The translations under genes and the position numbers were made by a program. Positions 28,701 to 51,231 of a stretch of DNA of 64,000 nt are shown here, piece by piece. Source of the DNA: Antechinus flavipes (lineage: Eukaryota); contig NC_067398.1 in assembly GCF_016432865.1 (NCBI RefSeq), forward strand, positions 717,650,001 to 717,714,000, read 5' to 3'. Position 1 is the first letter of the stretch; each line of letters opens with the position of its first letter. The notes below the pieces were generated by a model, which was not told the origin of the DNA, made no database searches, and worked only from the letters and a program-made list of their open reading frames with translations.

Positions 28701-31700
28701 GGAAGCAAGGCGCAGAGGACGGGGTAGCGGGCCTTGGTCGGCCAGGGCAGGCCCCGGACCCTCTCTAGGAGCTCCTCATAGAGGGGCCGCTCTGCTCCAT
28801 CCCCGAGGTGCTCGCACTCCTTCCCATAGAGCTCCAGAAAGAGGCTGAAGGCGCGCAGAGTCGCCTCGGACAGGCCTTCCAGCTGTGGGGAGGCACAAGC
28901 CCCATGTGCCAGAGAAGGGCTGCCTCCTCCCCCTCCCTCCCCCTCGCTCCCCTCCCCATGTGCCAGGGAAGGGCTGCCTCCTCCCCCTCCCTCTCGCTCC
29001 CTCCCCCTCCCCGTGTGCCAGGGAAGGGCTGCCTCCTTCCTGCCCCTCCCCCACGCAGGCTTTGGCACTTCTCCTCTCTCTCCCTCCCTCTCTCAGCCGC
29101 GCTGCCGCTGGTGGAGACGCCTCCGCCTGCTCTGGGACTTGGGGCTCGCGCCTGGGACTGCTTATCACTCCCCCCCACCCCGTTACAGACCCGGGGCTGC
29201 CCCCGAGCTCCCAGCTGGAGATCGGAGCAGGAGTTTGGGGGCCCAAGCCGCGGGTGTTTCCGCCATCATGGTGTCAGACCAGCCCCCGCAGTGTGCCCAG
29301 GGCCACATCCCTGGCTCCATCTTCCCGGGCCCTTCCAGGGGCCTCGCCGCCCACTCTGCACAAGGGACTCCGACACCGGGAGGAGAGGGAGGCCCAGCCT
29401 GGCCTAGGGGGAGTCTCCTACCGGGCTCTCGGTGTTGCTCCAGATGAACTGAGTCAGCCGCAGGGCCCCCTGGGAGGTCCCGCTCAGGAGTCGCCCCATC
29501 CAGATGCCGGGGGTGCTTTCGTGGAGCCGTCGCAGCCACAGCAAAAAAGCTGGGAAGGGGCAGCGGACACTGTCAGGCCCCTGGCCCTGGGGGTCTGTCT
29601 GAGACCCCCTGTGTGCCCAAGGCCTTCCGGTGAGGCCCCCAGGCCAGGAGCTTCATCCCACTTCCCAGGGCCCGGCCCTCGCTCGGCCAGAACCACTGTC
29701 CAGTATCAGGGCCGCCTGTGGCCTCCTCCCCTCCCACCCAAGGCCAAGACTGTTGCTGTGTGGGGACTCTGGCTTCTCCCCAGAGGAAACCTATCCCCAG
29801 AAGCTCTGCTCCCAAACGCCAACCTAGGCCTGGAAATTCTCCTCCTGCCCCAGGCCCCCAGCCCCAGCAGGCCCCAGGTCCCAGGCCCCCAGCCCTAGCA
29901 GGCCCCAGGCTCCAAGCCCCCAGCCCCAGCAGGCCCCGGGTCCCAGGCCCCCAGCCCCAGCAGGCCCTGCCCCCATCATCCATTCCCACTGGCCCCAAGA
30001 GTCCTCACCCTGCAGGAGGAAGGCACGGTAGTCCATGTTCTTCTCGCTCCAGCCTGGGCCAACGGGGGGTATCAGGGCCCCCAGCAGCAGACAGGCCTGG
30101 GATTTGGGGGGAAACGCTATGAAGAAAGTGGCCAGCGTGGCCCCAAGGCTCGGGAGCAGAGGAGGGGGCCCTCGGGGACAGCCTCGCCCAGGCAGGGCAG
30201 ACGCCCCTGGCAAATCCCTGGGCTGACATGAGGATGTGAGGGCCGAGTGGGGCCCCTCAGCCCCTCTGCCTCCTCATTCCTCGGTTCAGGGCACCCTTGC
30301 CACCAGGGCCTCCTCCAGGCCCCCCAAGTCCAGGCCAGGACTCACCTTCCCCCCAGGGGGCCTGAAGGTCAGGATGTCCTTCCTGCAGGAGGTCAGAAGG
30401 CCTCGGCTCAGCACCAGGTCCTCCAGCCCATCGGGGTTCATGGGGGGCACAGCCACCCGGAGCCCCCCAAGCCTCTGCTCCCCAGGGTCTAAGGACAAAC
30501 CAACCCGCTCAGAGGAGCCTCCTCCCTTCCCCTGACCGCTCCCTCCGGGCCGAGGCCGCCCAGACCGGCTCCGCTTTCGGCCAGAGGCTCCCTGAGGTTC
30601 GGCTCAGGGCCCACTAGTGACACCCCGACTTCCCGAGGAGGCTCCTGCGCCCTGAGTGAGAGTCCCGAGGGCAGCCCCGGGAGTCCGGCCGACGGCCCGC
30701 ACTGAGTGCAGGGACACTGCTCGGCTCGGGCCCGGGGCCCGGGAGAGGCCGGGAAGGGCTGGCCTCCGGCTCGTCTCTCGCAGCCTCACCTGGGCCGAGC
30801 AGCCGCAGCAGCTGAGACACCGCGCCGGCCCCCGCCTCCGGCGTGGGGGCCGCGTTCACCAGCATGCCCAGGGCTGTGCCAGCCAGAAGCCGGGCATCCT
30901 TGCTGGCCACCTGCAGAAGGGCAAGAGCTGAAGCAGGCGGGCTCCCCTGGGGGCGGTCAGCAGGCCCCGCCCCCTTGGCCCGGGCCACAGGGCTGGCTCT
31001 CAGCCTCAGAAAAGTCTCCTCACCTTTCCCAGGACCACTTGCACCAGGGACTGAAGGATGCTTGCCAGGGGCTCCCCGCCCCCTGCTGGGCTCCAGGTCC
31101 GGGCCCCCACCTCCTCGGGCATGCTCTGGAAAAGCTGGAGGACTAGCTGTGGGCAGAGATCGGGCCCATCCCCCGGTGTGACCGCCAGCCGGCCCCGCCC
31201 CCCTCCCACGGGCCCCCGGAGGGCTTTGGGGCTCTGGGGGCGGCCCTGAGCCCCCCGGGGGCCGCCATCAGGCAGCGCACTCATTGGGGCTCTTGGCCGT
31301 GACCGCTCGGGCCCAGCTTTCCCGGGTGGGGATCCAGGGAGAAAAGGGGGCCCACCTTCACCGCGTGGCAGGCCCGCTCCCCGGCCCCGGCGGCGGGGTC
31401 CCGTAGCACGGAGGCCAGGGTGGAGGCCGCGCGGCCCAGCAGGCTGCCCAGGGCGTGTCTCCAGTGTTCTCGCGCCAGGCTGCTCTCCTCCAGGAACAGA
31501 CACACTGGGCAGAGGGGCCCGCGGGGTCAGGCGGTGGGCACGACGAGGGATCCCCCACCCCAAGGAGCCCCGCCAAGCATGGCCCCCCCTCCCGGGCCTC
31601 CCAGCTCGAGGTCGGAAGGTGGGCGGCCAGAGCTGTGGCCCCGGTTCCCAGGACAAAGGCCTGGCCTCTGCCCATTCTCTGGCCCCGTCCCTAGGGACGG

Positions 31701-34086: not shown

Positions 34087-34400
34087 GGAGGCGGTGGCGA
34101 CGGCCCCTGGCTGTCGAGAGGTTTCCGGCGGGTCCGTGATTCGCGGGGAGCGAGCCTCCGGCGTGCACTCCCGGCTCCGTGCCGGCTTCCGGGCCACCGA
34201 GCGCGGCCTTTCCCCCCCGCTGGCGCCTGTACGCGTACGCGATACCGGACAGCGCCCCCAGCGGCTCGGAGGGCTGTTACCCGGGGAGGGGCGGGGAGCC
34301 GAGGCTGCGAGAAGGGAGGAGGTAGAGGGAGGAGCTAGAGCGCCGGGAGGGCGGGCTGCCGGAGGCCCGAAGCCGACTGGGACCCTGTCAGAGATCTGGG
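33900..34400 (-). promoter_or_regulatory. CpG island/promoter and first exon of the THADA-like gene
   Basis: Dense CpG and GC boxes around the ATG at 34086; palindrome GTACGCGTAC at 34229-34238. Confidence 0.65.
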
Positions 34401-35939
34401 ACCAGCCTGACCACTAGTGAAGACACGGGGATGGGGAGGGACAGGGCTCGGAGACCGGAAAACGGTCCGAGACAGAGTCACCGAGCTTTGAAGAAGCCTG
34501 CGCCTAGCGGGTGCCAGTGCTGGGGAAGGAGGGACAGGGACCCCGGAGGGAGGCCGAGGCTCCGGGAGGGCTCCTCCTGCGGTTGACCGGCTACACCTTG
34601 TTTGCACGTAATTGTTTGCCGTTAGATCGGCGCTCCGTGTCCGAAGAGATCGTTTTCCTCTTTCCTGGTTTTTAATGCACTTAATCACACTGCCTGGCAT
34701 ACAGCAGACACAATAAATGCTGACGGCAGCTGAAAGAGTCCGGGAGAACGGAAGGCAAACTGAGAAGGGACAGCGTCTCGGCCGTGTCATGTCCTGCTCC
34801 AGTCATGGCCGGTTTTATTCTTTGCTAGCACATAGGATTTGGTCCACCCACCATGTGGAAGAAACGCTGCAAGGTGCTGGGGATTCAGAATGAAAAGAAA
34901 CTGTCCCTGGCCTCCAGAAGCTTCCCTTCTACCGGGAGGAGGGCACAATGTATACATAGATAAGGAAATAGAAAGTAATTCTGGTCCCTTTCGCTGCTTT
35001 GCCCCTCACTACAGGACCCCGTTTCTCCCTTCCACCTGATCTCCCTGTCAGGTAGGATCTCCAAACTGAATATTCCCGGGTTGATTTATTCAGGCCTGAA
35101 TTCTGCTGAAGTCGGGATTCACGTCCCTAATTGCCTACCTTGACTTGGGGTCCTCCACCATCTTAAACCCAGCAAGGCCAAAACGGAAGGCGTCTAGTTT
35201 TCTCCGAAAGTTCTCTCTTCCTCCTAACTTTTCCTCCAGCTCACAGCCTAGGGGGCAGCCTATTACCAAGTCCCGTTAATTCAAAACATTTTCCATACGT
35301 AGGGCTATGGATTTGTCCATACGTACATATTTGCATGTATCTGTAGCTATTTACATAAAGTTATATTCACTCCTGACTCTTGGCAATAGCTTTGTGCTTG
35401 GTCCTCCCCTCAGCTCTGTCCCCGGTCCGATCCAACTCACCCCCCGAAACCCCCCCTCCCCCCACACACATGTCAAAGTGACCTTCCTTAAGCACAGACT
35501 TGACCCTGTCACCCTCTACTCAGTCAACGCCAGGGACGGCCTGTCACCTCCGGGGTCAGACACGAACTGCTCTGGTTGGTGCTGACAGCCCCCTCCTCAC
35601 GCCTCACTCCCCACCCCATCCTCTTCCGCCCAGTGCCCTCGCCACCCGGCTGCTCCACCAGCAAGACCCTCCATCTCTGGGCTCCGGCCATTGGGCGACC
35701 ACCGCCGCAGCTGGACCTCTCTGCTCTGCCCTCCCAGCTAACCTACGGAAGCTTCCCTATTTCCCACAATTCCAGCGCCTCCTTCTGGGGCTTATGTCCA
35801 AAGCTGCTCTGAACGGGTCTGATTTGCAGGTGCTCTCTCCCATTAGACTGGGGACTCCCCAAGGGCAGGGTCCGTCTTTGCCTCCCGGGGCTTCACATAG
35901 TTTGTGTCAGTGTTTAATAAATGCGGGTCTGATCCGACA

Positions 35940-36340
35940 GACTAGGAGGGCGTCGCGGGGAGGAGGAGGCGTGGCCTACAGGCCCGGTGCGCCCGGCCGC
36001 GGGCCCACGGGAATGAGAGATTGGCTCCGGGGAGCCGCCGTCGCCGCTCGGGAGCACGTGACCTCCGGCCACGCCTCCCCGTTCCCCGGGCAACCGCGCC
36101 CGCCCCGCCCTGTACCCGGAGGTCGTTGGCGCAGAGCGATGGCGTCGCCGTGACGTCACCGTCGCGCGCAGCCCGGACACCGGCTGGGAGCGCGCCGGCC
36201 GCCGCCGCGGCCACTGGTGGGGGCGGGTATCCTGGCCTCGGGTGGGTTGGGAGGGCGCGCGCCGTCTGCGCGGCGGGGCCCTGCCCGGCCACCGACGGAG
36301 GCCCGGCGCCGCACCCCCGAGGGAGGGCTTAGCCGGCCTC
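35940..36340 (+). promoter_or_regulatory. CpG-island promoter, probable non-coding first exon of the Myb/SANT gene
   Basis: Dense CpG; perfect CRE palindrome GTGACGTCAC 36150-36159, E-box CACGTGAC 36055-36062, reverse CCAAT (ATTGG) 36020-36024; the downstream coding exon starts at an acceptor and needs an upstream exon. Confidence 0.6.
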
Positions 36341-36344
36341 GTTC

Positions 36345-36490
36345 TGTTCTTATGCGACCCTCACAACCACCCTGGGAGGTAGGTGCCGTTGTGGCCCCCA
36401 TTTTACAGATGAGGAAACTGAGGCGCCAACAGGCTTGCTCGGGATCCCACAGCCCGCAAGTGTCAGAGGTTGGATTGGAACTCGGGTCTG
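36345..36490 (-). mobile_element. MIR fragment
   Basis: cccattttacagatgaggaaactgaggc, the reverse MIR core. Confidence 0.7.
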
Positions 36491-36786: not shown

Positions 36787-37200
36787 GGAGTGTGACCTCC
36801 AGGGAACCCCCCCAGTCTGGGGATCCCAGGGGACCCCAACCCCTGCAAGGGGGCAGGGAGTGTGACCTCCAGGGAACCGCCTCCCCCCCAGTCTGAGGAT
36901 CCCAGGGGACCCCAACTCCTGCAAGGGGGCAGGAGTGTGACCTCCAGGGAACCTCCCCAGTCTGGGGATCCCAGGGGACCCCAACCCCTGCAAGGGGGCA
37001 GGAGTGTGACCTCCAGGGAACCTCCCCAGTCTGGGGATCCCAGGGGACCCCAACCCCTGCAAGGGGGCAGGAGTGTGACCTCCAGGGAACCTCCCCAGTC
37101 TGGGGATCCCAGGGGACCCCAACTCCTGCAAGGGGGCAGGAGTGTGACCTCCAGGGAACCCCCCCAGTCTGGGGATCCCAGGGGACCCCAACCCCTCCAG
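36787..37200. repeat. Minisatellite, about 69 bp x6 (ggagtgtgacctccagggaacctccccagtctggggatcccaggggaccccaacccctgcaagggggca)
   Basis: Six near-identical copies; 23-aa periodicity in the ORF track (VTSREPPQSGDPRGPQPLQGGRS). Confidence 0.95.
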
Positions 37201-37477
37201 GATGCCCTGGAGGCAGGGAGTGCACTGGGGGTGGGAGATGGACAGGGCAGCTAGGAGGGCTGGAGGCTTAGGAGGGAGGCCAGGAAGGAGGCCGGGAAGG
37301 AGACCCAATGGCCACGGGGGCTGCCGCTTCCCGAGGTTTCAGGGAGAGGCTGGGCGTCCACCCCGGCCGGGCCAGGAGGTTGGTCCTCGGGCCTTCGGGC
37401 TCTGGGGTTCCCCGGGCGGCCATTTGTGGGGCGGCGAGTGCTCCGGCATGACCGGCTGGGTTTTTTTCAGGGTCACC

Positions 37478-40400
37478 ATGATGACATCCAAGCCAAAGAG
37501 AATTAAGTTTTCTGAAGAAGAGAAGATTGTGATCCTGGAAGAGTTCAGCCTGCGCAAGGACATCCTCATCCCCAAGACCGGCCGCTACCGCAACACGTCG
37601 GACCGGCAGCAAGCCTGGGAGGAGATCACGATGGCCGTGAACTCGCTGAACCCCCTCGTCCAGCGCACGCCCGAAGAGGTCCGCAAGAAGTGGAAGAACA
37701 TGATCCTGGACGCCCGCAAGGAGCTGGCCACCGCCAAGCACCCCCTGCTGCGGCGGCGCCCCCAGGAGCGCCTCTTCCATAACATCTTTGCCCTGTTCAA
37801 CAAGACGGGCTCCGAGCTCCCCGAGCCGCTGTACGCGACGGGCCCCGGCTTTCGGACTAAAGGTCCCCCCAGCCCCTCCGAGCCCGCCTGCAAGGTGGAA
37901 GGCTTTCTGGACCCCGGCCTGGTGCTCCGGCCCCAGGGCGTCGCCGTGGAGCCCGGCCAGGAGAGGGAGGGTCTCTGTCAGATTGAGGTGAGCAGGAAAC
38001 TGGACTCTTGGCCCGAGGTCTCGGGGAAGAGCCTCCTCCCATCCCCCGTGGACGTTCAGGCCCGATTCAAGGAGGACGCTCTGACCGAAGATGCCTCCGA
38101 CTACAGTGAGAAGAGGCTGCTTGACCCACTGAAGGACTTGCCCCTGCACTGTGAGCCCGTGGCCCAGGTGCACCCCGCCGCGGCCGGCGGGGCCGTCTCG
38201 CCCGAGGGTCCGCCCGGGGACCTGCCCCACCTCTGCACGCTGCCGGTCCCGGCGAGCCCGTCCCCGGACCCGGCTCTGACTTATAAGATTAAATGCCCCG
38301 TCAGCCCCTTGCTAGACTGGCCCTGCTTGGCAGTGAGCGCCAGCCCCGTCACGCCCAGTGGCCGCTTGGACCCTCTGAGCACGGAAGGAATCCACACCGC
38401 CATGACCGACAACGGTGAGCATCCCGCGCTCTCTCTGGCCTTATTTAAGCCTAGCGAGGTCCGTTAGAAATGGGGCCCCCAGAGGAGGTCCCTCGGCTCT
38501 TGGGTCCTTTAGGGTTATCCCTTGGTCTGACAGATGAGGAAACTGAGGCTGTGGATCGCCCGAGGTCACCCTGCAAAGTGTCGGAGCCCAGGTCTTCTCC
38601 CTCTGGGATCATTGCCATTTCCACTTCTCGCCAAACTGGTTTGATAGAAACAAACGTAGAGTTAGACACGAAACAATAATTCCCCATGTTTCTTGCCGTT
38701 GTACAAGTTGGCCACCAGGAGAGGGATCCTCCTTTTACATCAGCGGTCTGAAAACTGGGCTGTCGGGGGTGGAGCGTTTGGGGTTTGCGATGATGGAAAA
38801 AGGAGAGGCTAAAGAAATTTCCTTGAGGAAGCTTTTTAAAACTCTCTCGTTTCAAATAAAGATTCTTTTTGTCCGTATCCTGCCCTTCTTGGTGATCGCT
38901 GCTCAGGTTTGACACAGGCCGCGTTTGGGGGGAAGCTGTGACGTTCAGCCCCATCGCTAAGTGCTGTGAGCTCCCCCCGGCCCCATCGCTCTCGCCAGTC
39001 TCCCTGTCGGTGATCCTGGCCTTGTCTGAGAAAATCCTGGCGTTGACACTTTGTAGCTCGGTGACCCAGCCAGAGCGGGCTCCGGGACCACTCTGACCCT
39101 CAGTTTTCTCACCAAAAAGAATACGCTCTAATTCTGATGCCATCGGCGAAAGCTTTGGCAGTGCTCTAGAGCGAGCCCTTTCTTGGAGAGGGTGCCCTGG
39201 GCATCTGAGCCGCACAATTATCAATGACCTGGATGGAGGCAGGCCAGCCATGCTTACTAGCCTCCCTTCATGGGTCAAAGCCAGGAGAGAGAGAACATTT
39301 TGCATGATGGGAAGGATCAGAAGGCATCTCCATGGGCTAAGGATTGGAAGGGGAGGGAATAAGCTTTTCAATAGCACCACTGTGTACCAGGCTCTGTGCT
39401 CGGCACTTTACAGATAGCTCGGGCCTTGTGCTCCTTGCCCCCGGGGTGCAGAACGTGGAGGGGGTGAGTCAGCTTCTGTAAAGCAGAATTTGACAAGATT
39501 AGAAGAGGCATTAATTAAGGCTGTGGGATACGAGAGAGAGGGATTATGGATTTTTCTCCCATAGTGCTCTCTGGCCCTAAGAGCTTCAAGGGAGGCGTGA
39601 ATTCCGATATCTCATACTAAACCCTGAAATTTCCCAAACGTGTGAACTCCAATGAGTAAGGGTGTGAACACAAGCATTGTATTAATTAGTTCTACTTAGT
39701 ACCTTGTTTCAGGTTCTGGCCCAAAACATCTTCTTGTAAGAGCAGATCAATAATCTATCAGCTCTAATGAGTTAGCAGCTTCTAAAGATTCCAACAGGCT
39801 AAGGATTGGAAGGGGAGGGAATAAGCGTTTAAATAGCACCACTGTGTACCAGGCTCTGTGCTTGGCACTTTACAGATAGCTCGGGCCTTGTGCTCCTTGC
39901 CCCCGGGGGACAGAACATGGAGGGGGTGAGAGGAAAAGCTCCCTAAGGATCAGAGCTGTCCCAGGCAGGCGGGAGCTCCCCCTTCCCGCAGGTCTTAAGT
40001 CAGGATGTTTGGGAAAGGATTCCTGTCGAAGCAGGATCAGGTTCAAGGTTGGATTATTCTCTCCCGGCAGTCATTTTTCAGTTGCGTCCGACTCTTCACG
40101 ATCCCATTTGGGGTTCTCTTGGCAGAAATTGCAAATGGGGTTGGGGATTAGCCGGCGTCACATGGCTGGTGAGTGTCTAAGGCAGGATTTGAACTCGGGA
40201 AGAGGAGTCTTCAGTCTGGCATGTGGTGCCCCCGGCTTCCTTTGGCTTCTCTGCTGCCTCCAACTCGGCGACCCTGGTTCACGTGCCTTGGGAATCACCG
40301 TCCACTCTCTGCTGCTCCCGTGACAGGCTCGGGCCGTCCCTAGCGGCCCCCGAGGGGCCGGTGTTGCAGAATCAGGGAACGGAGCTGGACGAGGAGGGGA

Positions 40401-43400
40401 CCGTTGAGAGGGAGGAAGCCCCACTGTTACACGTAGCATTAATCGGTGGCGCCCACCGCCTCCCTGGCACGTCCGGCTCCCATGTGGCACAGCTGTGATT
40501 GTGAGGGGACATTTCTCTCCAGCCAGCTGACTTGAGCTTTACAAAGCACAGCCCTTCGGGTACCGGAGCTCCACGCATATGCCCTATCCCGAGTCTTTGT
40601 TGGGGAAAACCTGCCCAGTTCCTTCAGCTGATCCTTCCGTGACACGGAGCCCAGGCCCTCCACCATCCCGGCCGTCCCCTCTGGACTCTGAGCTTCTCGG
40701 TGCCTTTCTTAAACCGAGGGGCACTTGATGAAGGCTGAGGATCCCAGCCGGACGATCACCTCCTCTTCCTGGAAGCGGCTCCTCTCTTGGGCTGAATGAA
40801 CACCCTCCATTCCGAGATGGAACGATCAGTCCATCAGCCAGCATTTATTAAGCACCACTAAGGGTCAGGCGCTGTCCCGGCTCCCAGGGATACGAAAAGA
40901 GCCCAGTTCCTTCCTTGGGGAGCTTGTGATGTGATGGAGGAGGCAAACAAATGTATACCGGGCATGCTGCAGACTGGATAAAGAGGAGATAATTAGCTGA
41001 GGGAGGGTGCCAGAATTAAGGGGGACTTAAGCATGTGGAACTAAAGGAAGCCAGAGAGATCAGTGTTTTAGCCTGGGGGATGGCCTGAGAAAATGCTCAG
41101 AGCCCACAGATGGAGGGTCCTGTGTGTGGACCAGCTGGGAGGGGAACAAGGCAGGAGAAGACAGGAGATAGCTTAGGAGGCCTTCGAGTGCCAACCAGAG
41201 CATCTCGTTTTTGCTCCTGGAGCCAATGGGGTGATGAGATCAGACTTGGGCCCGAAGGATGGTCTGGATGGGGGGAGACCTAAGGCAACAGAGCCCCCAG
41301 CAGCCACTGCAGGAGGCCTGGTAGAGGGAATGAGCTCTGGCAGAGAAGAAAAGGGGGAAAAAAGGAGATAGAATGGAGGTGACATGGACAGGCAGAAGTG
41401 GGGAGGAGATCAGGGTGACCTCTCAGGTGTGAACCTGGGGGAGCCAAGAGGGGTGGTGCCCTCAGCTATGAAAGGGAAGGGAATGATGATGAGTCGTGTT
41501 CAGACATCTTATCACTCCATCCTGTCTGACCTTCCTGGACCATAACCCATCAGGCCTTTCTGTCCTCCCCCATCTTCCAGAATCTGTCCACGCTCCTGCG
41601 TGTTCTTCTCTGATCCTGTCTCCACCTCATTCTCTGGCGCCCCTTCTCCTTTTGTTCAGTCTTTCCCGACGTCGGGGTCCTTTCCAATGAGTCCCATCTT
41701 CTCACTATGTGGCCTAAGGGTTTCAGCTTTTGACCTTCCAGTGAACAGTCTGAATCGATTTCTTTGAGGACGCACCGATTTGCTCTCCTTGCCGTCTGGG
41801 GGACTCGGACATTTCCTCCGGCACCACAGTTTGAAAGCCTCGGTTCTGCGGCGCTCAGCGTTGCCGTCTCGTCGCCCAATGCTCACAGCCATACGTCGCT
41901 GCTGGGAAAATCCTAGTTTTGACTTCACAGATTCTGCAGGCAAGCGATGTGTCTGCTTTTTAGCACGCCGTCCAGAGCTTTCTTCCTGAGGAGAAGCGGC
42001 TTTTGATTTCCTGGCTACAGTCACTGTCTCCAGTGATCCTCGAGCCCGAGAGCATAAAACCTGACCCTGCTTCCATTTCTTCTGCCCCTGTTTGCCAGGA
42101 AGTGATGGGACCAGTTGCCAAGATCTTGGGTTTTTTGATATTAAGCTTCAAGCCAGCTTCTGTACCCTCATCTTTCACCCACACCTTCACTTTCTGCCAT
42201 CAGAGTGTATCCCCTGCGCATCTGAGATTGGCGATATTTCCTCCAGTAATCTTCGTTGCCGCTTTTGATTCACACAACCCGGCCTGTCACCTGATGTTCG
42301 CCGCATAGAAGTTAAATAAGGTAACGACGTACGGCCACGTTATTGGCCTTTCCGGTATTAAACCAGTCGGTTGTTCCACATTCAGTTCTCACTGCTGCTT
42401 TTTGGCCCGGGTACAGGCTCCTCGGGAGACAAATGTAATGGTCTAGTACTCCCTGTTGGAGGGCTTGCCCCATTTTATGTGATCCACACAGTCAAAGGCT
42501 TTCGTATAGTCTTTCGGGAACTCCCTCGCTTTCTCCGTTATCCAGCAAGCGTCGGCAGTTTGGTCTCTAGTTCCTTTGCCTCTTTAAAACCCTAAATGCG
42601 CTTGTGATTCTTGTGTCACAGACTGCTGACCCTAACCCAACCCTAACTTCGCGCCAAACCTAGCTTGCAGAACCTTGAGTACGATTTTGGCAGTGTGGGA
42701 AATGAGCACGATTGATGGATAATTGGAAAGTTTCTGGGCGTTGACCTTCTTTAGGGACGTGACCTAAACTGATCGTTTCCCATCCAGCGGCCGCTGTGGA
42801 GTTTTCCAAATTTGCTGGGTATTAAGTGCGGCATTTTAAGAGCCTTAAAAGGCTCAGCTGGAATTCCATCCCCACCACTCGCTTGATTGTCTGCCGGCTT
42901 CCTGAGGCGCACTTGACTTCTCTCTCCAGGATGTCTGGCTCTCTCTAGATCAGGAACCACACCATGGTGGTTATCGGGTTATCAGGTTATCACGGTTCTC
43001 TCTTTTCTTGCCACTTAATCTCTTCTGCTTTTGTTAAATTCCTCTTGTTATCTCACCCATTTTTGCACAAGATATTTTTGTATCTTAAAAGGATCTCTTG
43101 GCTTTTCTATTGTTTTTTTTTTTCCTGTTTCTTTGCATTGTTCATTTAAGAAAACCCTCCTCTCTCCTTAGTATTCTCTGGAATTCTACATCCTGTTGTA
43201 GTTATCTTTCCCTTTCCCTTTCCCTCTTTCCTCGGCTGTTTGCCAAGCCTCACGGAAGTCAGTTTGCTTTCTGGCTCTTTTCCTTGGAATATTTTTTGTT
43301 GCTGTGGCCTGCACGATATTGCAACCCCCTGTCCGTAGTTCTTCGGGCCCTCTAGCTACCGGATCTATTCCCTTAAATGTATTCATAATGCAGTCGTCGT

Positions 43401-46400
43401 TTCCACTTCATATTCAGGTGAAATGTTGTTTAGGTCTGATAATTTCTCCTACTTTCTTCAATTTAAGTCAGGATTTGTCACTAAGAAGCTCATGCTCAGG
43501 GCCACTGCCAGCTCTAGGTCTTGTTTTAGCTGACTCCACCTTTGCCTGTAAAGAATATACATAATCTGTCTGATTTTAATATTGGCCATCTGGTGGTGTC
43601 CACGTGTGGAGGCACCTCCTAGTGGTCGAAAAAGGATGTTTGCCGTGACCAGAGAGTTATCTTGCTCAAACTCTATTGCTGTCCGCCCTTCTTCATTTTG
43701 TCCTGGGAGAGCAAGGGTTAAGATGTCTCCTAAACATACACCGGGAGATGGGTGAAAGACAAGAGAGATTGGAGGTCAGCAGAGAGATTGAGGCTCGAAA
43801 GGCAGATTTGAATCGGTAGGAGCTGGTGAGATGCCAAATCAGAGGGAGAAAGGAAATGGACGGAGCCCTAAAGGACCCCTCTGGTGGAGGGCACCATCTG
43901 GACAGCAAAGGGGGCAGAGGAGGAACGGTCAGAGATGGAGGAGAACAAGGAGAGCCAGCGTCCCGAGCACCCGGATAGAAGAGAGGCTCAGGGAGGAGAG
44001 AGTGAGGGATGCGTCATTACCTGCACAGAGGCCAGGGAGCAGGAGGGTGGGGAAAAGGCTACTGGCTGTAGCACCTAAGGGATCCCTTTGGGGAACGGTG
44101 ATGTCGGAAACTGGAACTGTCCGAGAGCGTGAGAGAATCCAGAGGCCTTTTCCAGGAGTTTGGCTCCAGAGACATAAGGATGTGGTGCAGAAGGAAGGAC
44201 AGTACATTTTAAATGAGATAAAATCTCCAAAAATTTTCAAAGTGCTTAGGTCAAAGACCGGCACATGGCCGGTGCAGTTCGGGTGCTCGGTCTCTTTTTC
44301 CCTTTTTCCCATCTGCTCCGTGACCAGGCCACTCCCACTTTGTTCCAGAGAAGTCGAGCGTTCAGTCCCCGACCAAGGCTGGATATTCCTCTGCCGAATT
44401 TCAGCTTCCATCCCAGACCCTTGGGGGTCTGATTCGGTCTCCCTCCCGTCGGTGTGGCGTGCCGTCTATGCCTTCGTCCAAGTCCCTGAGAAAACTGTTG
44501 GGAAGTTCACGGGAGGGCCTGGGTCTCAGCACTGCGGACAGCTCTTCCTTGCCTGGGAGGGAGCTCGGGGAGCTGGGAGTCACCAAGGAAGAGAAAGGGG
44601 ATTAAGGGGAAGGAAGCCTGAGGAGAGGCTTGGAGGCAGGAGGAGGATTGCGTGACCTCGGGCCCCGCTTCTCATTGGTGGGTGAAAAACATGGGCCTGT
44701 GGGGAAGGCTTAGCCAGAGCCACAAAGCCACAAGCACAAAGCCTTCTTCAAACACAGTTAAGAAATCTGAGGCTCTCTGGGAGGGCGGAGAGCCTCGGGC
44801 GAGGGGGCAAAGGAAGACTCCACGGGTCTTGCCCAATCCCTGCTCCTTCCCCTACCTTCCTGCTGCTCCCCCGTGACCCCAGCCTGGTACCGCCCACAGC
44901 TGCAGCTCCTCTCTGTGGTGGGGCCCAGCAGGGATGCCCTGAGCTCATGGGCTTGATTTCCTCCCCGCCCCAACAAGCCAGTGAGTGCCTCTGGCACCCC
45001 GGCTGAGGTGCACCTTGACCTCTGGCCTTGGACTTGAGGATGGGGTGGGAGGAATCCGTGAGGGAGACCAGAGTTCAGTTACAGACCCTGTTCTTGCCTT
45101 GAACAGCAGCCACCCAGTCAGGGAAAACTAGATTCATCCTTTGTGGAACTCAGCACCAGATAGTTTGGGATTAACCTTTAACCTCAGGCCAAAAGCAGAG
45201 CTGGGGCGGCCTCTGGAACTGGGCAGAGCTGGCAGGGGCCCTGGAGGCCCCCACGCCCATACCCAGTGAATCGGCCTCTGCCACCCCTTACTTCCCTGGT
45301 AACGGATGTTCCTGATTTCCCTCCTGTGCCTTTGCCTGGCTCTTGGGTTTCCTTCCCCCAAGGGCAAGTGTATTTCCCAGAGTTCTGTCTGGTGCCTCCT
45401 CCTGTCCCCTCCCTCCCCAGGGTGCCATCGCAGGTCCCCCAAAGGTCAGGCTCTCCCGAGAGTCCTCGGGTCTCCTGCCCAGCGTCCGGCCAGCCGAAGC
45501 AGCTCCATCCCCCGGCCCGGCTGCCTTAGTCTAGGTATCCTCCCCCACCCCATCATGCCTCTGGTCTCTGGCCCCGCTCCCCCCTGTGCCAGCTATGGTG
45601 GCCCCCATAGCCCCGCCCAGACTTGGGAGAGGTTGCCAGAGTGGCCGAGGAGGGCGGCGAAAAGCCTTGCCCTCTTCCACGTTCTGGGCCGGGCCGGGAG
45701 ACTCCCGAGGCACCTGTAGTGAGGAGGGAGGGATGGGGAGAAAGGTTCAGAATCAGCAGCAGAAAGGAGGGATGCAGGTGAGGGAGGCCAGGCTCAGAGG
45801 CCTCCCCCAGGACAGGGAGGAAGAGGCCCCTGCAGAGGAGGCAGGGGAAGGAAGGGGTGGCCCCAGCCCGGGGCACACACAGGCCCCGAGTGAGCGGGAG
45901 CCGCCGAGGGACCTGGGAGGGAGAGTACTGGGTGTGCAGAGGCCCCGCGCGCGGGCTGGAGTCCTGCTGCTGCTGCTGCTCCCAGCCCGCTGTGGCCTGG
46001 GGAACGAGTGTTCCCCGCCGGGCCCCGGTTTCTGGAAGACGGGGGGTTAGCCTGGCTGTTCCCATTCTCCCAGGCTCCGGGCCAAATTAGCAGCTGTCCT
46101 GGGGCGGAGGGAGGCGGGGCAGCTTCGGGATCACCTCCGATCGGCTTCTCAGCTGGCAGGTAGGGGGCAGGGAGTCGGGAGGCCGGGGCTGAACCCCACG
46201 GCCTTCCACGCTTATTCTGCGGGTCTCCGACCTCGCCCCCATTCCAAATGGATACTAGAAGTGGGAGAGGGAGAAAGGTCAGAACTCCTCTTCCCCACGG
46301 AATCAGGCTGGTGCACACTGGGAACCTTGGGTGTGGGCACGTGGAGCCGGGCGATCTCACCACTTCGGGGTGCTTTAGTGCAGTGGAGCGGGCCAGGCGG

Positions 46401-49400
46401 GGTCTGCACGGGAGGGCCGGGGCAGGGGGGCGGGCCAGAAACGGGGCGTCTTCCCTCCAGACGCACTGAAATCTGGCCAGTGCGTGGCTGTGCACTTCCA
46501 GCAGAGGCAGGTTTGGGAGACCCCTTTAAAAAAAAGGAAAGAATTAGAGTCAGAGATCGTCAGAGCTTGAAAGGTGAGAGTTCAAAGGCATCTTACCAGA
46601 ATGTTCCAGCTACTGCAGAATTTAGCTTGTCTAAGTTGGGACAGAGGTCAGAGGCTGTCAGTTTGAGAGAGTCCTTAGAACAGGGGAGGTCAGGGCTGGG
46701 AGGGGGCTTAGAACAGGGGATGTCAGGGCTGGGAGGGACCTTAGAACAGGGAATGTCAGGGCTGGGAGGGGGCTTAGAACAGGGAATATCAGGGCTGGGA
46801 GGGAGCTTAGAACTGGAGATGTCAGGGCTGGGAGGGGGCTTAGAACAGGGGAGGTCAGGGCTGGGAGGGGGCTTAGAAGAGGGAATGTCAGGGCTGGGAG
46901 GGGGCTTAGAACAGGGGGTGTCAGAGCTGGGAGGGGCCTTAGAACATGTCAGAGCTGGGAGGGGCCTGAGTTTAAGGAGGATCAGAATCAGGAGATAAAC
47001 CTGAAAACCATACTCAGTTGGAAGAGATTTTGTAGCGTTGGGTAGGAAGTGCAGGGAAGCCTTCCCCACCAATGAGAGTGTCCCCAGGGGAGGGGACCCC
47101 CCCACCCCCCGACGAGTGCTGGTTTCCCTCCACCAGGTGGCGGATGCCCCCTTGCCACCTGTTGGGAAGGAGATTCACGTGCAGTTGTGAAAGGCAGTGG
47201 ATGCCTCCTGTCCAGAGAGCCCAGCATTCCTGCTCCACTTGGAGTCACTCCCGGCCTCGGGGGTGGGGAAGAAGGAATGGTACAACACAGAGGAGGCGGG
47301 GGCTGGACAGATCCGGGACAAGCCAGGGCCGGCAGAGTGGCCTGGGCTGGACTCCAGGCGGGCTGATTCTGGGCCATTGGAAGGGGTCGCCCTGGTGGAT
47401 CCCCAAGGACAGGCTGGGGGGGGGGGCACGTCCGCCCACTCTGGTTCGCGCTCTCCACAAGCATTGGCCGTCCCTGCCCGCGCCCCGCGCCTGCGATTTG
47501 TCTGGAACATCGTGTGGAAGCGGGAAGCAGAGCGCGGGGCGCCCTGGGCTGGCTGGCTCTGTCCGAGGTGCTGGGGGTGCCAGGGAGAGGGCCCAGGTGG
47601 GGAGACACCGGCCACGGGAAGGCCCATCCCAGGGACCTTAAAGGGCAAGACCGGTAATTTGGGGAGCCGTGGGGGGTTCAGGCTGGGAGAGAGAGACTTT
47701 AGTAGGCAGAGATGAGGAGGGGGCAGTCAGGGCCCAGGGACAGCACGAGGCCAGTGCAAATGGCCTGGAGACTGCTGAGGGGCCACCTGAAGCACATTAT
47801 TCCCAAAGGGCTTCGTGCGATGCTGGGGGCAGTGGGCGCCCTGGGAGGTTGTTGAGCAGGGATGGTGATAGTTACCTGCCATCTCAGGGGGATGGACTGG
47901 AGTGTGAGGAGAGAGGAGGCCGGGAGGCCGTGGCAGTGGCCGAGCCGGCCGGGACATCCCCCCTCCTCTCAGTGATTTTGGTCTGCTCTCCTTCCAAGAG
48001 GACCGACTTTCCCCTCTAGAGGACTTGCCCGTGATGGCGGAGGCACCAAAGATGGAACATTGGGACCTCAGAGGCCTCGTCCGATGCTAATGAAGTCCTC
48101 TGACTCCCAGCGTTCCTGGGGAGCCCAGGGGGATCACAAACACCTGGGGCCATAGAAACGGTGTTGGGGGCCTGATGCCCATCACCAGTGGGCTAGACTC
48201 CCTCCGGACAGGGCTGGCAGGAACCACAGGGCCCGGGCACGGGCCAGCTCTCCACAGGGCGGTGACAGATAACTCTGGTCCCTTTGCAGGGAGGGAGGGA
48301 GACCTGGGCCAGAAGCCAAGTAGAGCCATCACTGAGTGTCTGAAGAGAGGAGGGAGGGGACGGTCGGGCACGGGAGCCACAGAGCTCCTTTGTCTGCCAC
48401 CCCCAGCCTGTGGTTTTCCCTGATTGGACAAGCACTTAGAGCAGGCCCCGCCCACAGATGGAGCCCAGGGTGGGCGTGTGCCGGAGCCCCAGCCTCCAGC
48501 CTCATCCCTTCTGGGGCCATTTGTTTGGTCCATTCTGCCTGCCTGGGAACTGGTGACCTTGAGCCTGTCACCTGCCGGGGCTTACTGACTCACTGGGATC
48601 CCAGATTTAGAGTTGGAAAGCATCTGAGAGCCAATGGAGTTCAGGGCTGACATCCTGTGGAGGAGGGAACCGAGGCCCAGCATTGCAGTGTGGGGGAGAG
48701 GCAGGGAATCTGAATCCAGATGTTGTGACTCCAAGGAGAGGGAGGTTTTCTCACTGTACCATCCTGCGAGTGACAAGAGGAAAAGTGCTGGACCTGGGGC
48801 TTGAACCCAGATTCTCTGCTTCCAGCTCTAGTGCTTGCTGCAGGGCTGCAAATGTGGCCAGAATCCAAGCATCTTCCGGTCCAGGGTCCCAGCATCCTCA
48901 GGGCCAGAATCCAAGCATCTTCCGGTCCAGGGTCCCAGCATCCTCAGGGCCAGAATCCAAGCATCCTCTGGTCCAGGGTCCCAGCATCCTCAGGGCCAGA
49001 ATCCAAGCATCCTCCGGTCCAGGGTCCCAGCATCCTCAGGGCCAGAATCCAAGCATCCTCCGGTCCAGGGTCCCAGCATCCTCTGGTCCGATCTGCTGCT
49101 TCTCCCATGTCCCCTTATATCCCATGCTCTCCTCAGTGAGGCCGGCCAGGCTCCCCTCCTCTTTGACTTCCTTGTCTCTCCTCCCCCTTTTCCTTTGTTC
49201 TCCTTCAGTGAGCGCCTCGGTGGTGACCGCGGAGGAGGACTTGCTGCCCGGCCCCCGGCCCGGCGAGGAGGGGCTGCCAGAGAAGGATTCTGGGGAAGTG
49301 GCCAAGCAGAGTCGCCTCCAGACGGAGATACTGGAGCTGCAAAAGGAAACGCTGCAACTGCAGAAAGAGAAGATTCTCCTGGAAAAGGAGAAACTGGTCC

Positions 49401-49438
49401 TGGAGATCGTCAAGCTGCGGCGGGAGCTGGGCACCTGA
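37478..49438 (+). CDS. Myb/SANT-like DNA-binding domain protein with C-terminal coiled coil (MSANTD/NAIF1-type, Harbinger-derived), 2 coding exons, 388 aa
   Basis: Acceptor tttttttcag at 37470, ATG 37478, exon to 38414 (AAC G|GTGAG, phase 1); 10.8-kb intron; acceptor ccttcag|49209, phase-compatible, TGA 49436-49438; 937+230=1167 nt. N-terminus KRIKFSEEEKIVILEEFSLRKDIL...RQQAWEEITMAVNSLNPLVQRTPEEVRKKWKNM matches the Myb_DNA-bind_5 pattern; C-terminus LQTEILELQKETLQLQKEKILLEKEKLVLEIVKLRRE is a heptad coiled coil. Extra internal exons are not excluded. Confidence 0.82.
39335..39930. repeat. 134-bp direct duplication (39335-39468 and 39797-39930) flanking a 328-bp LTR-like insert
   Basis: Both copies run ggctaaggattggaagggg...ggagggggtgag with about 6 mismatches; the insert ends in ...ttccaaCA. 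Confidence 0.85.
40826..41480 (-). mobile_element. LINE-2 fragment (3' part), interrupted by BovB
   Basis: gcatttattaagcacc is the reverse L2 3' terminus; L2-like purine-rich sequence resumes at about 43740-44400 after the BovB copy. Confidence 0.65.
41485..43720 (-). mobile_element. RTE-BovB LINE, decayed reverse-transcriptase/3' portion
   Basis: Minus-strand peptides AGLKLNIKKPKILATGPITSWQ...SRITGDSDCSQEIK (41960-42190) and RVPQTARRANRCVLKEIDSDCSLEGQKLK...GRQRMRW (41550-41879) match BovB ORF C-terminal motifs; many frameshifts. Confidence 0.88.
43740..44400 (-). mobile_element. LINE-2 fragment (continuation)
   Basis: gagagattgaggctcgaaaggcagatttg...gagaaaggaaatggacggagccctaaaggacccct, L2-like as recalled; decayed. 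Confidence 0.5.
46675..46966 (+). repeat. Minisatellite, 33 bp x about 9 (ttagaacaggggatgtcagggctgggagggggc)
   Basis: Visible tandem units (LEQGMSGLGGG periodicity); reverse complement of the array at 50798-51231. Confidence 0.95.
48856..49090. repeat. Minisatellite, 46 bp x about 5 (ggccagaatccaagcatcttccggtccagggtcccagcatcctcag)
   Basis: Visible tandem copies ending about 120 bp upstream of the 49208 acceptor. Confidence 0.95.
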
Positions 49439-50797: not shown

Positions 50798-51231
50798 TGT
50801 TCTAGAACCCCTCCCAGCCCTGACACCCCCTGTTCTAAACCCCTCCCAGCCCTGACACCCCTTGTTCTAAACCCCTCCCAGCCCTGACACCCCCTGTTCT
50901 AAACCCCTCCCAGCCCTGACACCCCCTGTTCTAAACCCCTCCCAGCCCTGACACCCCCTGTTCTAAACCCCTCCCAGCCCTGACACCCCCTGTTCTAGGC
51001 CCCTCCCAGCCCTGACACCCCCTGTTCTAAGCCCCTCCCAGCCCTGACACCCCCTGTTCTAAACCCCTCCCAGCCCTGACACCCCCTGTTCTAGGCCCCT
51101 CCCAGCCCTGACACCCCCTGTTCTAAGCCCCTCCCAGCCCTGACACCCCCTGTTCTAAACCCCTCCCAGCCCTGATATCCCCTGTTCTAGGCCCCTCCCA
51201 GCCCTGACACCCCCTGTTCTAGGCCCCTCCC
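50798..51231 (-). repeat. Minisatellite, 32 bp x13 (cccctcccagccctgacaccccctgttctaaa), highly homogeneous
   Basis: 13 counted units; inverted homolog of the 46675-46966 array. Confidence 0.95.

What the first reader, a model, noticed from the sequence alone, without database searches (positions are those of the whole stretch)
37478..49438. Unnamed domesticated Harbinger-type Myb/SANT plus coiled-coil gene
Seen: intact 388-aa two-exon CDS with an N-terminal tri-helical Myb/SANT-like domain, a P/S-rich linker and a terminal coiled coil. There is no DDE transposase or terminal inverted repeat in the window. Established: PIF/Harbinger transposons encode a Myb/SANT protein, repeatedly domesticated (NAIF1, MSANTD family) and able to partner HARBI1. 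Inference: a further vertebrate domestication event, likely a nuclear DNA-binding or chromatin factor of unknown function.
Basis: partly seen in the sequence, partly recalled or inferred. Interest (0 to 1): 0.7.

Follow-up and report, generated by a model that had tools for sequence, protein, structure and literature searches.

The report
Unnamed tamed Harbinger Myb gene
This marsupial window holds an intact, expressed, strongly conserved gene descended from the DNA-binding helper protein of a Harbinger jumping gene. Marsupials, birds, turtles and lizards keep it at the same chromosomal spot, no placental mammal protein matches it, and it has no name or publication.

Summary
A 388-aa protein is encoded by 37478-38414 and 49209-49438 (+), split by a phase-1 intron. 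RNA contigs from public runs end exactly at the 38414 donor and reveal an extra non-coding 5' exon ending at 36378.

Both exon peptides are 100% identical to Antechinus flavipes LOC127548778, so the window is a dasyurid marsupial. Orthologues, all "uncharacterized", occur in marsupials, turtles, birds and squamates. They share the same two coding exons and lie between a THADA-like gene and SLC25A1. An exhaustive HMMER search of 1.8 billion representatives found no orthologue-level eutherian, monotreme, crocodilian, amphibian or fish protein.

- **Selection:** purifying. Myb-domain dN/dS is 0.00-0.07 among marsupials, and the coiled coil shows 0 non-synonymous against 9-11 synonymous changes.
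- **Fold:** the N-terminus folds as a tri-helix closest to the Drosophila Zeste DNA-binding domain. Residues 340-386 form one confident long helix with two leucine stripes.
- **Ancestry:** a close relative sits in a 3.2-kb fish element with 31-nt terminal inverted repeats (TIRs) and a DDE_Tnp_4 transposase. It shares both the Myb domain (39%) and the coiled-coil motif (17/24).

A tree with the named paralogues could not be built.

The parts
36000..36400 (+). CpG-island promoter region. It lies between the Myb gene (+) and the THADA-like gene, whose matched exons on the minus strand reach 30.5 kb.
   Evidence: GC 0.76-0.77 and CpG o/e 0.83-1.15. Conserved with koala and Dromiciops at 72-73% over about 35.7-36.5 kb.
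36119..36378 (+). Non-coding 5' exon, with donor AG|GTAGGT after 36378. Its 5' limit is uncertain.
   Evidence: The X16 RNA contig overhang maps to 36354-36376. The X24 contig carries 100 letters upstream of the acceptor. The N-terminal extension of the RefSeq Antechinus model maps to 36119-36379 and 35521-35847.
37471..38414 (+). First coding exon: acceptor ag at 37469-37470, ATG at 37478, donor GT at 38415.
   Evidence: Sequence. RNA contigs of X24 and X16 are bounded at 37469 and 38414. The peptide is 100% identical to P0041 residues 198-509.
37505..37738 (+). Myb/SANT-like tri-helix DNA-binding domain (residues 10-87).
   Evidence: PF13873 E = 5.8e-17. The model has pLDDT above 90 in the core. 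The best PDB match is the Zeste DNA-binding domain on DNA, 5cqq, TM 0.72-0.74 normalised to the target (0.46 to the query). dN/dS is 0.00-0.07 among marsupials.
37736..37801 (+). Conserved post-Myb segment (KHP...LFHNIFALF; predicted helix at residues 95-108). It aligns with the 'KTGGGPP + helix' block of transposon Myb-like proteins.
   Evidence: Alignment A3; invariant columns in A2 and A4; helix 95-108 in both models.
38282..38365 (+). Conserved short motif inside the disordered linker (residues 269-296; consensus KIKCPLSPxLxWPCLGV..SP). Function unknown.
   Evidence: Invariant or nearly invariant P, S, L and W columns across marsupials, turtles, birds and squamates.
38415..49208 (+). Phase-1 intron of 10.8 kb. 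It holds a polymorphic 462-bp insertion at 39402-39863 and tandem arrays at 46674-46946 and 48856-49089.
   Evidence: An intron separates the same two coding blocks in duck, turtle, lizard, koala and Dromiciops, with 0.65 to 12.7 kb between them. DNA contigs of X19 and X21 skip 39402-39863. Tandem arrays.
49209..49438 (+). Last coding exon, including the stop codon. The 3' UTR runs on to at least about 49528.
   Evidence: Sequence. 95% identical to the koala protein's C-terminus and 100% to P0041 residues 511-585. The X24 contig has 320 letters beyond the donor. Marsupial conservation continues to about 50090.
49310..49435 (+). C-terminal coiled-coil helix (residues 347-388) with two leucine stripes of exact 7-residue spacing.
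   Evidence: Helix 340-386 at pLDDT about 98. Nearly invariant across amniotes. 0 non-synonymous against 9-11 synonymous differences among marsupials. Heptad analysis. 17/24 identical to the coiled coil of a fish Harbinger Myb-like protein.

Best explanation
**What it is.** This is a bona fide, single-locus host gene of a dasyurid marsupial, the orthologue of Antechinus flavipes LOC127548778. It descends from the Myb-like helper gene of a PIF/Harbinger DNA transposon.

**Shown here:**
- It is transcribed and spliced.
- It sits at the same place (THADA-like gene - this gene - SLC25A1) and has the same two coding exons in marsupials, turtles, birds and squamates.
- It evolves under strong purifying selection.
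- It has no orthologue-level match among annotated proteins of eutherians or any other vertebrate group.

**Inferred mechanism:**
- The N-terminal Zeste-type tri-helix binds DNA.
- The basic KPKRIK stretch in front of it may act as a nuclear localisation signal.
- The invariant C-terminal helix has two hydrophobic faces. It would make the protein self-associate, or dock a partner, so that it acts as a multivalent DNA-bound transcription or chromatin regulator.
- The long disordered proline-rich linker carries one conserved short motif that probably recruits a further partner.
- The whole layout, Myb domain plus this coiled coil, is inherited from the transposon protein. In such proteins the C-terminal part contacts the transposase. 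The domesticated transposase HARBI1 is therefore a plausible partner, as it is for NAIF1.
For: **Gene model and expression:**. X24 contig: no mismatches, bounded at the acceptor and at the 38414 donor, with 100 and 320 extra letters. X16 shows the same bounds in a sister species at 97% identity.

**Identity:** both exon peptides are 100% identical to P0041.

**Distribution:**. The orthologue group ends at E about 1e-26. The next hit scores 96 bits and is a fish protein.

**Synteny and exon structure:**

**Selection:**

**Fold:**

**Harbinger ancestry:**
- P0186 is present as three copies, 98-99% identical, of a 3.2-kb unit.
- The unit has 31-nt TIRs that are 97% complementary.
- It carries a DDE_Tnp_4 ORF, E = 5e-25.
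- P0186 matches the Antechinus protein at 39% over the Myb domain and 17/24 over the coiled coil.

**Family tree:** the amniote family is one clade (100/100) on a long stem, among transposon-like Myb proteins.

**Literature:**
- Harbinger Myb-like proteins and NAIF1 bind DNA and the transposase or HARBI1 (PMC9392472, section 14).
- The nuclease-binding region is C-terminal in NAIF1, HDP2 and Ping Myb (PMC7282668).
Against: - No DNA-binding, oligomerisation or partner data exist for this protein. All functional steps are inferred from fold and ancestry.
- The RNA contigs show that the 38414 donor is used. The letters beyond it were not displayed, so the join to 49209 rests on length (320 = 230 + about 90) and on the annotated proteins of other species.
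- A weaker contig at 38416-38871 suggests that some transcripts keep the intron. Reading through the donor would give a 329-aa product without the coiled coil.
- Absence from eutherians, monotremes and crocodilians rests on annotated proteins only, not on genome searches.
- Independence from MSANTD4, FSBP and NAIF1 was not tested with a tree that includes them.
Confidence: 0.72

Rival explanations
1. It is simply the marsupial orthologue of an already named vertebrate Myb/SANT gene (MSANTD3, MSANTD4, NAIF1, FSBP, MYPOP or a newer MSANTD symbol) that annotation pipelines failed to name.
For: It has the same overall layout as MSANTD4 and FSBP, from my knowledge of those proteins: PF13873 domain plus C-terminal coiled coil. 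The protein atlas lists FSBP clusters as the next most similar named clusters (0.91 and 0.90). One short Pogona fragment and several mollusc relatives are labelled 'MSANTD4' by NCBI.
Against: - More than 40 orthologue clusters in species with RefSeq annotation are 'uncharacterized'.
- No eutherian protein reaches orthologue level in an exhaustive search that includes NCBI and UniRef.
- None of the 30 relatives looked up outside the family is a named vertebrate gene.
- Short motifs recalled for the named genes hit only invertebrate sequences (a weak test).
- The named genes lie on human chromosomes 4, 9 and 11 at conserved positions (PMC9392472). This gene is beside SLC25A1.
Confidence: 0.06
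2. It is not domesticated. It is a remnant or still-mobile Harbinger element copy whose Myb-like ORF happens to be intact.
For: Close relatives are transposon-borne, and both domains are shared with them.
Against: - Same flanking genes and the same coding-exon split from duck to marsupials, spanning the bird-mammal split.
- The locus is collinear among three marsupials, including promoter and intron.
- dN/dS is far below 1.
- One copy in the window and no DDE transposase.
- A CpG-island promoter and a spliced 5' UTR.
Confidence: 0.02
3. The real product is the long isoform (585 aa in the Antechinus RefSeq model) with about 197 extra N-terminal residues, and the 388-aa model is truncated.
For: The upstream reading frame is open. 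The RefSeq models of Antechinus, Trichosurus, Sarcophilus and wallaby carry N-terminal extensions.
Against: - The extensions differ completely between species, apart from nucleotide-level similarity among dasyurids.
- They are translations of the GC-rich 5' UTR and CpG island.
- Koala, Dromiciops, opossum, turtles, birds and lizards all start at the conserved M(M)T.KPKRIKF.
Confidence: 0.08
4. Same gene, different mechanism. The coiled coil does not self-associate but serves only as the docking site for HARBI1, so the protein is a NAIF1-like targeting and nuclear-import subunit of a HARBI1 nuclease complex rather than a transcription factor.
For: C-terminal parts of NAIF1, HDP2 and Ping Myb bind their nucleases (PMC7282668). 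The coiled-coil motif is shared with a protein from a transposon that encodes a transposase. It is near-invariant over the bird-mammal split.
Against: No interaction data exist. The helix has two leucine stripes, which suits self-association as well. HARBI1 itself was not examined here.
Confidence: 0.25

Closest known systems
NAIF1, MSANTD3 and MSANTD4 (Harbinger Myb-like-derived vertebrate genes; Etchegaray et al. 2022, PMC9392472)
   Same: Myb/SANT-like tri-helix of the PF13873 type, similar to Harbinger Myb-like proteins. [quoted passage not shown] No transposase or TIR.
   Different: - Different locus, beside SLC25A1.
- Found only in marsupials and sauropsids, and not among proteins of eutherians, amphibians or fishes. 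The named genes are reported from cartilaginous fishes or sarcopterygians through to mammals.
- Not retrieved together with any of them in sequence searches.
- It was missed by a survey that started from human genes.
Myb-like protein of an active-looking fish Harbinger element (P0186/P0053, Siphateles boraxobius; L007:5726-8917)
   Same: 39% identity over the Myb domain and 17/24 identical residues in the coiled-coil motif. Same order of parts: Myb domain, linker, C-terminal coiled coil.
   Different: The fish protein is 235 aa, multi-copy, and flanked by 31-nt TIRs with a DDE_Tnp_4 ORF. It keeps the 'KTGGGPPP' block, which in the amniote gene has become 'KHPLLRRRPQE'. The amniote gene has a linker of roughly 230 residues with its own conserved motif.
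Drosophila Zeste
   Same: Best structural match of the DNA-binding domain (5cqq; TM 0.72-0.74 normalised to the 75-residue target, 0.46 to the 125-residue query; 27-29% identity). From my own knowledge, Zeste also combines an N-terminal DNA-binding domain with C-terminal heptad repeats that drive multimerisation.
   Different: No detectable sequence orthology beyond the domain family. Foldseek E is only 4e-3. Zeste's function in transvection and PcG/trxG regulation cannot be transferred.
FSBP (fibrinogen silencer-binding protein)
   Same: Nearest named cluster by language-model features (0.91). It has a PF13873 domain.
   Different: The atlas score is a lead only. FSBP is present in eutherians at another locus, overlapping RAD54B (from my knowledge). 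It was not among the best 150 HMMER hits by motif check.

Membership tests
Pfam PF13873 (Myb_DNA-bind_5) Myb/SANT-like proteins | Significant match to the family HMM above the gathering score | tested here: met
   61.8 bits against a cut-off of 21.7, residues 10-84.
Pfam PF13873 (Myb_DNA-bind_5) Myb/SANT-like proteins | Tri-helical fold with a long third (recognition) helix | tested here: met
   Helices 13-30, 40-57 and 65-87, with pLDDT above 90 in the core. Best PDB matches are the Zeste and GT-1 trihelix DNA-binding domains.
Domesticated Harbinger Myb-like genes (NAIF1/MSANTD kind) | Sequence similarity to a Myb-like protein encoded by a real Harbinger element (TIRs plus DDE_Tnp_4 transposase) | tested here: met
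   The P0186 element has three copies at 98-99%, 31-nt TIRs and a DDE_Tnp_4 ORF at E = 5e-25. BLASTP gives 2e-16 for the Myb domain and 3e-6 for the coiled coil.
Domesticated Harbinger Myb-like genes (NAIF1/MSANTD kind) | Single gene at a conserved syntenic position in divergent species, without TIRs or a transposase | tested here: met
   THADA-like gene - this gene - Mito_carr (SLC25A1) in duck, koala, opossum, Dromiciops and the window. THADA-like upstream in turtle and lizard. No DDE hit in the window. TIRs were not specifically searched for in the window.
Domesticated Harbinger Myb-like genes (NAIF1/MSANTD kind) | Purifying selection on the coding sequence | tested here: met
   Pairwise NG86: exon 1 omega is 0.13-0.14 among marsupials, the Myb domain 0.00-0.07, and the coiled coil has no non-synonymous changes.
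Domesticated Harbinger Myb-like genes (NAIF1/MSANTD kind) | Expression as a spliced host mRNA | tested here: met
   RNA contigs are bounded by the splice sites in two species. The tissue is unknown because the runs are coded.
1:1 orthologue of a named MSANTD, NAIF1, FSBP or MYPOP gene | Groups with the named gene's orthologues (including eutherian ones) and shares their synteny | tested here: not met
   No eutherian or named protein is in the orthologue group of an exhaustive search. The locus is beside SLC25A1, unlike the loci given in PMC9392472. A joint tree with the named genes could not be built because no sequences were available by reference.
NAIF1-like partner of HARBI1 | Physical interaction with HARBI1 or a Harbinger transposase through the C-terminal part | not testable with these tools
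   Only ancestry and the cited literature (PMC7282668, PMC9392472) suggest it.
Zeste-like multimerising DNA-binding proteins | Self-association through C-terminal heptad repeats | not testable with these tools
   A confident single helix at 340-386 with two leucine stripes. The oligomeric state was not predicted.

The most novel reading that the evidence does not exclude
The invariant, two-faced C-terminal helix is the preserved transposase-docking surface of the ancestral Harbinger helper protein. On this reading the protein is a second, NAIF1-independent DNA-targeting subunit for the domesticated nuclease HARBI1 in non-eutherian amniotes. Its loss, together with its THADA-like neighbour, in the eutherian stem would mark a rewiring of that complex.
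Probability: 0.12. Interest if true: 0.7.

Novelty: new member of a known kind. Interest (0 to 1): 0.5.

Why it matters
The catalogue of vertebrate genes tamed from Harbinger transposons (HARBI1, NAIF1, MSANTD1-4) was built starting from the human genome. A member missing from placental mammals would therefore have been overlooked. This gene is such a member.

- It is kept by both the bird and the mammal lineage, so it dates back at least to their common ancestor.
- Its coiled coil is nearly unchanged over that time and is still recognisable in a transposon-borne relative.
- It is absent from the annotated proteins of placentals.

It adds a lineage-restricted regulator to look at in marsupial, bird and reptile biology. 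It also offers a clean case for asking which transposon-era interfaces (DNA binding, transposase docking, self-association) are retained after domestication. The effect on the field is incremental, not a new principle.

Tried and rejected
1. **Word-index protein searches for named paralogues.** Three searches (exon 1, orthologue profile, Myb region at E up to 10) returned only orthologues. Sequences recalled from memory were not used, except as short motifs for a weak grep.
2. **Joined CDS.** Searches were done exon by exon. Full-length work used the public proteins P0041:198-585 (identical in both exon peptides) and koala P0001.
3. **PDB sequence search.** It found nothing but a chance coiled-coil match.
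4. **P0051 locus.** P0051 is the weakly supported sister of the family in the tree. Its locus (L006) shows no transposase ORF and no convincing TIRs, so it was uninformative.
5. **Read laying.** The call could not span both coding exons under the 6,000-letter limit, so the 38414-to-49209 joint was not seen as a joint.
6. **NCBIfam.** It has no model for this protein, as expected for a library of bacterial and archaeal families.
7. **Literature.** A search for six LOC identifiers of the orthologues gave 0 papers. MSANTD5 and MSANTD7 occur in none of the 15 listed hits of a combined search. Sinzelle et al. 2008 is not held.
8. **Long N-terminal extensions.** I treat them as probably translated 5' UTR, not real protein.
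Full report
**Observation**

The + strand carries an ATG at 37478 in an open frame that runs to a consensus donor (G|GTGAGC) after 38414. A polypyrimidine tract and acceptor (TCTCCTTCAG|) precede 49209. The split codon G+TG encodes Val, and the frame ends at TGA 49436-49438. That gives 937 + 230 nt, or 388 codons.

Pfam places PF13873 (Myb_DNA-bind_5) at residues 10-84, E = 5.8e-17, with weaker hits to the related Myb_DNA-bind_4, MADF and Myb_DNA-bind_6 models. The exon-2 peptide has no family hit of note.

Every search used the exons separately by reference. Full-length analyses used public proteins that a tool returned.

**Whose gene it is**

The exon-1 peptide finds marsupial proteins at 78-90% identity: koala LOC110215291, Dromiciops LOC122751964, sugar glider, Tasmanian devil, opossum LOC103091946 and tammar wallaby. 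It then finds turtles at 55-58%, birds at 43-50% and squamates at 39-44% over near-full-length alignments. All are 'uncharacterized' or carry names that look assigned by similarity alone.

A profile of 15 orthologues adds Trichosurus LOC118849724 and Antechinus flavipes LOC127548778. Both window peptides are 100% identical to the Antechinus protein (P0041 residues 198-509 and 511-585). The window is therefore from A. flavipes or a very close relative. The upstream non-coding region differs slightly from the RefSeq model, at 95-99%.

The koala protein's C-terminus matches exon 2 at 95%. The public models therefore join the same two exons.

**Expression and gene structure**

Of the runs laid on 37300-41500, X19 and X21 are DNA. 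Their contigs run straight through the intron and lack a 462-bp insertion at 39402-39863.

X24 behaves as RNA:
- One 1366-nt contig covers exactly 37469-38414 with no mismatch.
- It carries 100 further letters on the 5' side and 320 on the 3' side that do not align to the adjacent genomic sequence.
- 320 letters fit 230 nt of exon 3 plus about 90 nt of 3' UTR.

X16, an RNA library of a sister species at 97% identity, shows contigs with the same two boundaries. Its 5' overhang maps to 36354-36376. There the sequence reads ...CTGGGAG|GTAGGT, and the acceptor is TTTTTTTCAG|GGTCACCATG at 37470/37471.

The gene therefore has at least one non-coding 5' exon inside a CpG island (GC 0.77, CpG o/e up to 1.15).

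A weaker X24 contig at 38416-38871 suggests some retained intron or pre-mRNA. Reading through the donor would end the protein at 38467 without the coiled coil.

The join to 49209 therefore rests on the length match and on the orthologous models.

**Conservation**

The alignments show three conserved parts:
- The first 108 or so residues are invariant or nearly so.
- A short island sits in the linker (KIKCPLSPxLxWPCLGV..SP).
- The last 40 residues (LQTEILELQKETLQLQKEKILLEKEKLLLEIVKLRRELGT) are almost unchanged between marsupials, turtles, birds and lizards.

Coding DNA from koala, Dromiciops, turtle, lizard and duck loci has the same two coding blocks. The gap between them ranges from 0.65 kb in duck to 12.7 kb in marsupials.

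Pairwise Nei-Gojobori estimates:

| Region | Result among marsupials |
|---|---|
| Exon 1 overall | omega 0.13-0.14 |
| Myb domain | omega 0.00-0.07 |
| Linker | omega 0.15-0.18 |
| Coiled coil | 0 non-synonymous against 9-11 synonymous differences |

**Synteny**

- In duck the gene lies between a THADA-like gene (TPR_Trm732, DUF2428, TPR_Trm732_C) and, downstream, an SBSPON-like gene and a Mito_carr gene.
- Koala, opossum and Dromiciops have THADA-like (about 1,600-1,900 aa, minus strand), then this gene, then Mito_carr on the minus strand.
- Turtle and lizard have THADA-like upstream on the plus strand.
- In the window, duck ORFs map the THADA-like gene to about 14.7-30.5 kb on the minus strand and the Mito_carr gene to 53.6-57.0 kb on the minus strand.
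- The THADA-like gene is thus inverted in marsupials relative to sauropsids. No SBSPON-like match is present in the window.
- The locus is collinear with koala and Dromiciops through promoter, intron and 3' flank.

**Distribution and nearest relatives**

An exhaustive HMMER search of 1.84 billion representatives with the orthologue profile gave 216 hits at E up to 1e-3. The orthologue group stops at about 1e-26 and contains only marsupials and sauropsids wherever a name is on record.

The next hits are:
- a fish protein at 96 bits;
- mollusc proteins that NCBI labels 'MSANTD4';
- echinoderm proteins, one of which aligns over its full length;
- a nematode 'zeste' and unnamed metagenomic or Logan proteins.

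None of the 30 hits looked up outside the family is a named vertebrate gene.

Many of these relatives end in the same kind of (L/I)EKEKL coiled coil and carry a 'KTGGGPP' block after the Myb domain. In a tree of 89 Myb domains the amniote family is one clade (100/100). It has a long stem and very short internal branches, and its weakly supported sister is a transposon-like protein.

The atlas search lists the protein's own cluster (51 chordate members, 'hypothetical') at 0.98, then FSBP clusters at 0.90-0.91.

**Direct evidence of Harbinger ancestry**

One relative, P0053/P0186 of the fish Siphateles boraxobius, is encoded at three places with an identical product.
- The shared unit is 3.2 kb and 98-99% identical between copies.
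- It is bounded by 31-nt TIRs that are 97% complementary.
- It holds a DDE_Tnp_4 (PF13359) ORF on the other strand, E = 5e-25.

It is therefore a Harbinger element.

Its Myb-like protein matches the Antechinus protein at 39% over 84 residues of the Myb domain. It also matches at 17 of 24 residues in the coiled coil, ILELQKETLQLQKEKILLEKEKL against VLELQREVLQLQKEKLQLEIEKL. Both functional modules of the amniote gene thus come from the transposon protein.

The window itself has one copy of the Myb exon and no DDE similarity.

**Structure**

- The first 125 residues fold with pLDDT above 90 in the core into helices 13-30, 40-57 and 65-87, plus a less certain helix 95-108.
- The best PDB matches are the Drosophila Zeste DNA-binding domain bound to DNA (5cqq; TM 0.72-0.74 by target, 0.46 by query; 27-29% identity; probability 1.0; E = 4e-3), then the Arabidopsis GT-1 trihelix domain.
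- The full-length public protein has a disordered 120-335 stretch and a single helix 340-386 at pLDDT about 98.
- That helix has two series of five Leu/Ile positions at exact 7-residue spacing, offset by five residues. This gives two hydrophobic faces.

**Mechanism (inferred)**

This is a DNA-binding protein, presumably nuclear. Its Zeste-type tri-helix contacts DNA. Its C-terminal helix drives self-association, docks a partner, or does both.

In Harbinger Myb-like proteins, NAIF1, HDP2 and Ping Myb, the C-terminal part binds the nuclease (PMC7282668). NAIF1 binds HARBI1 (PMC9392472, citing Sinzelle 2008, which I could not read). HARBI1 is therefore the obvious candidate partner.

A Zeste-like multimer that bridges DNA sites is the alternative. 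The conserved linker motif suggests one more, unknown, interaction.

**Comparison with what is known**

The survey that defined the family (PMC9392472) started from human genes. It lists MSANTD1-4 and NAIF1 at other loci, present from fishes or sarcopterygians through to mammals. It mentions neither marsupials nor this locus.

No paper in the library cites any of six LOC identifiers of the orthologues.

I therefore rate this as a new, unnamed member of a known kind. It is already predicted by RefSeq as a LOC gene but is undescribed.

**Limits**

- Absence from eutherians and other groups is absence from annotated proteins, not from genomes.
- Independent domestication against ancient paralogy is unresolved.
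- All functional statements are inferred.

Noticed in passing
window 14700-30500 (minus strand); L001:1-9039, L002:1-511, L004:1-5219, L005:1-4308: A compact gene of about 1,600-1,900 aa in the THADA/Trm732 family (TPR_Trm732, DUF2428, TPR_Trm732_C) is the constant upstream neighbour. It is tail-to-head with the Myb gene in duck, turtle and lizard but inverted (head-to-head) in koala, opossum, Dromiciops and this window. Whether it is THADA itself or a paralogue missing from placentals was not resolved.
   Followed up: partly
window 46674-46946 and 50798-51231: Two minisatellite arrays of the same 32-33-bp unit lie in opposite orientation on either side of the last exon, one in the intron and one about 1.4 kb past the stop. 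Koala and Dromiciops have matching arrays at the corresponding places.
   Followed up: partly
window 36787-37196: A 69-bp tandem repeat (5.8 copies, 93% matches) fills most of the intron between the 5' UTR exon and the coding exon. It produces long spurious ORFs on both strands.
   Followed up: no
window 39402-39863: A 462-bp insertion, probably a SINE-like repeat given very high k-mer depth at 39415-39837, is present in the window but skipped by the DNA contigs of two other samples, X19 and X21. It is an insertion polymorphism or a species difference inside the intron.
   Followed up: no
window 36352-36378 continuing at 37471: The 5' UTR exon contains an ATG (36352). After splicing it would open a short out-of-frame upstream ORF that overlaps the main start codon. 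The same ATG is present in the sister species' RNA overhang.
   Followed up: no
P0045, P0067 (penguin and other bird fragments): Some bird copies of the Myb domain show many Arg-to-Trp or Arg-to-Cys replacements and truncation. This looks like CpG decay of a pseudogenised copy.
   Followed up: no
L002:2097-4964 (koala, minus strand); window about 31700-34300: Koala annotation places a 285-aa gene without any Pfam family between the THADA-like gene and the Myb gene. Parts of it are conserved with the window at 83-87% (33120-33318, 33962-34312).
   Followed up: no
L001:12522-14540 (duck): An SBSPON-like gene (TSP1_spondin, SBSPON_C) lies between the Myb gene and SLC25A1 in duck. It has no match in the marsupial window.
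   Followed up: partly
L007:5726-8917 (Siphateles boraxobius): An apparently young Harbinger element: three copies at 98-99%, 31-nt TIRs, repeated CTTAAGG-like subterminal motifs, a Myb-like gene with a coiled coil, and a DDE_Tnp_4 ORF.
   Followed up: yes
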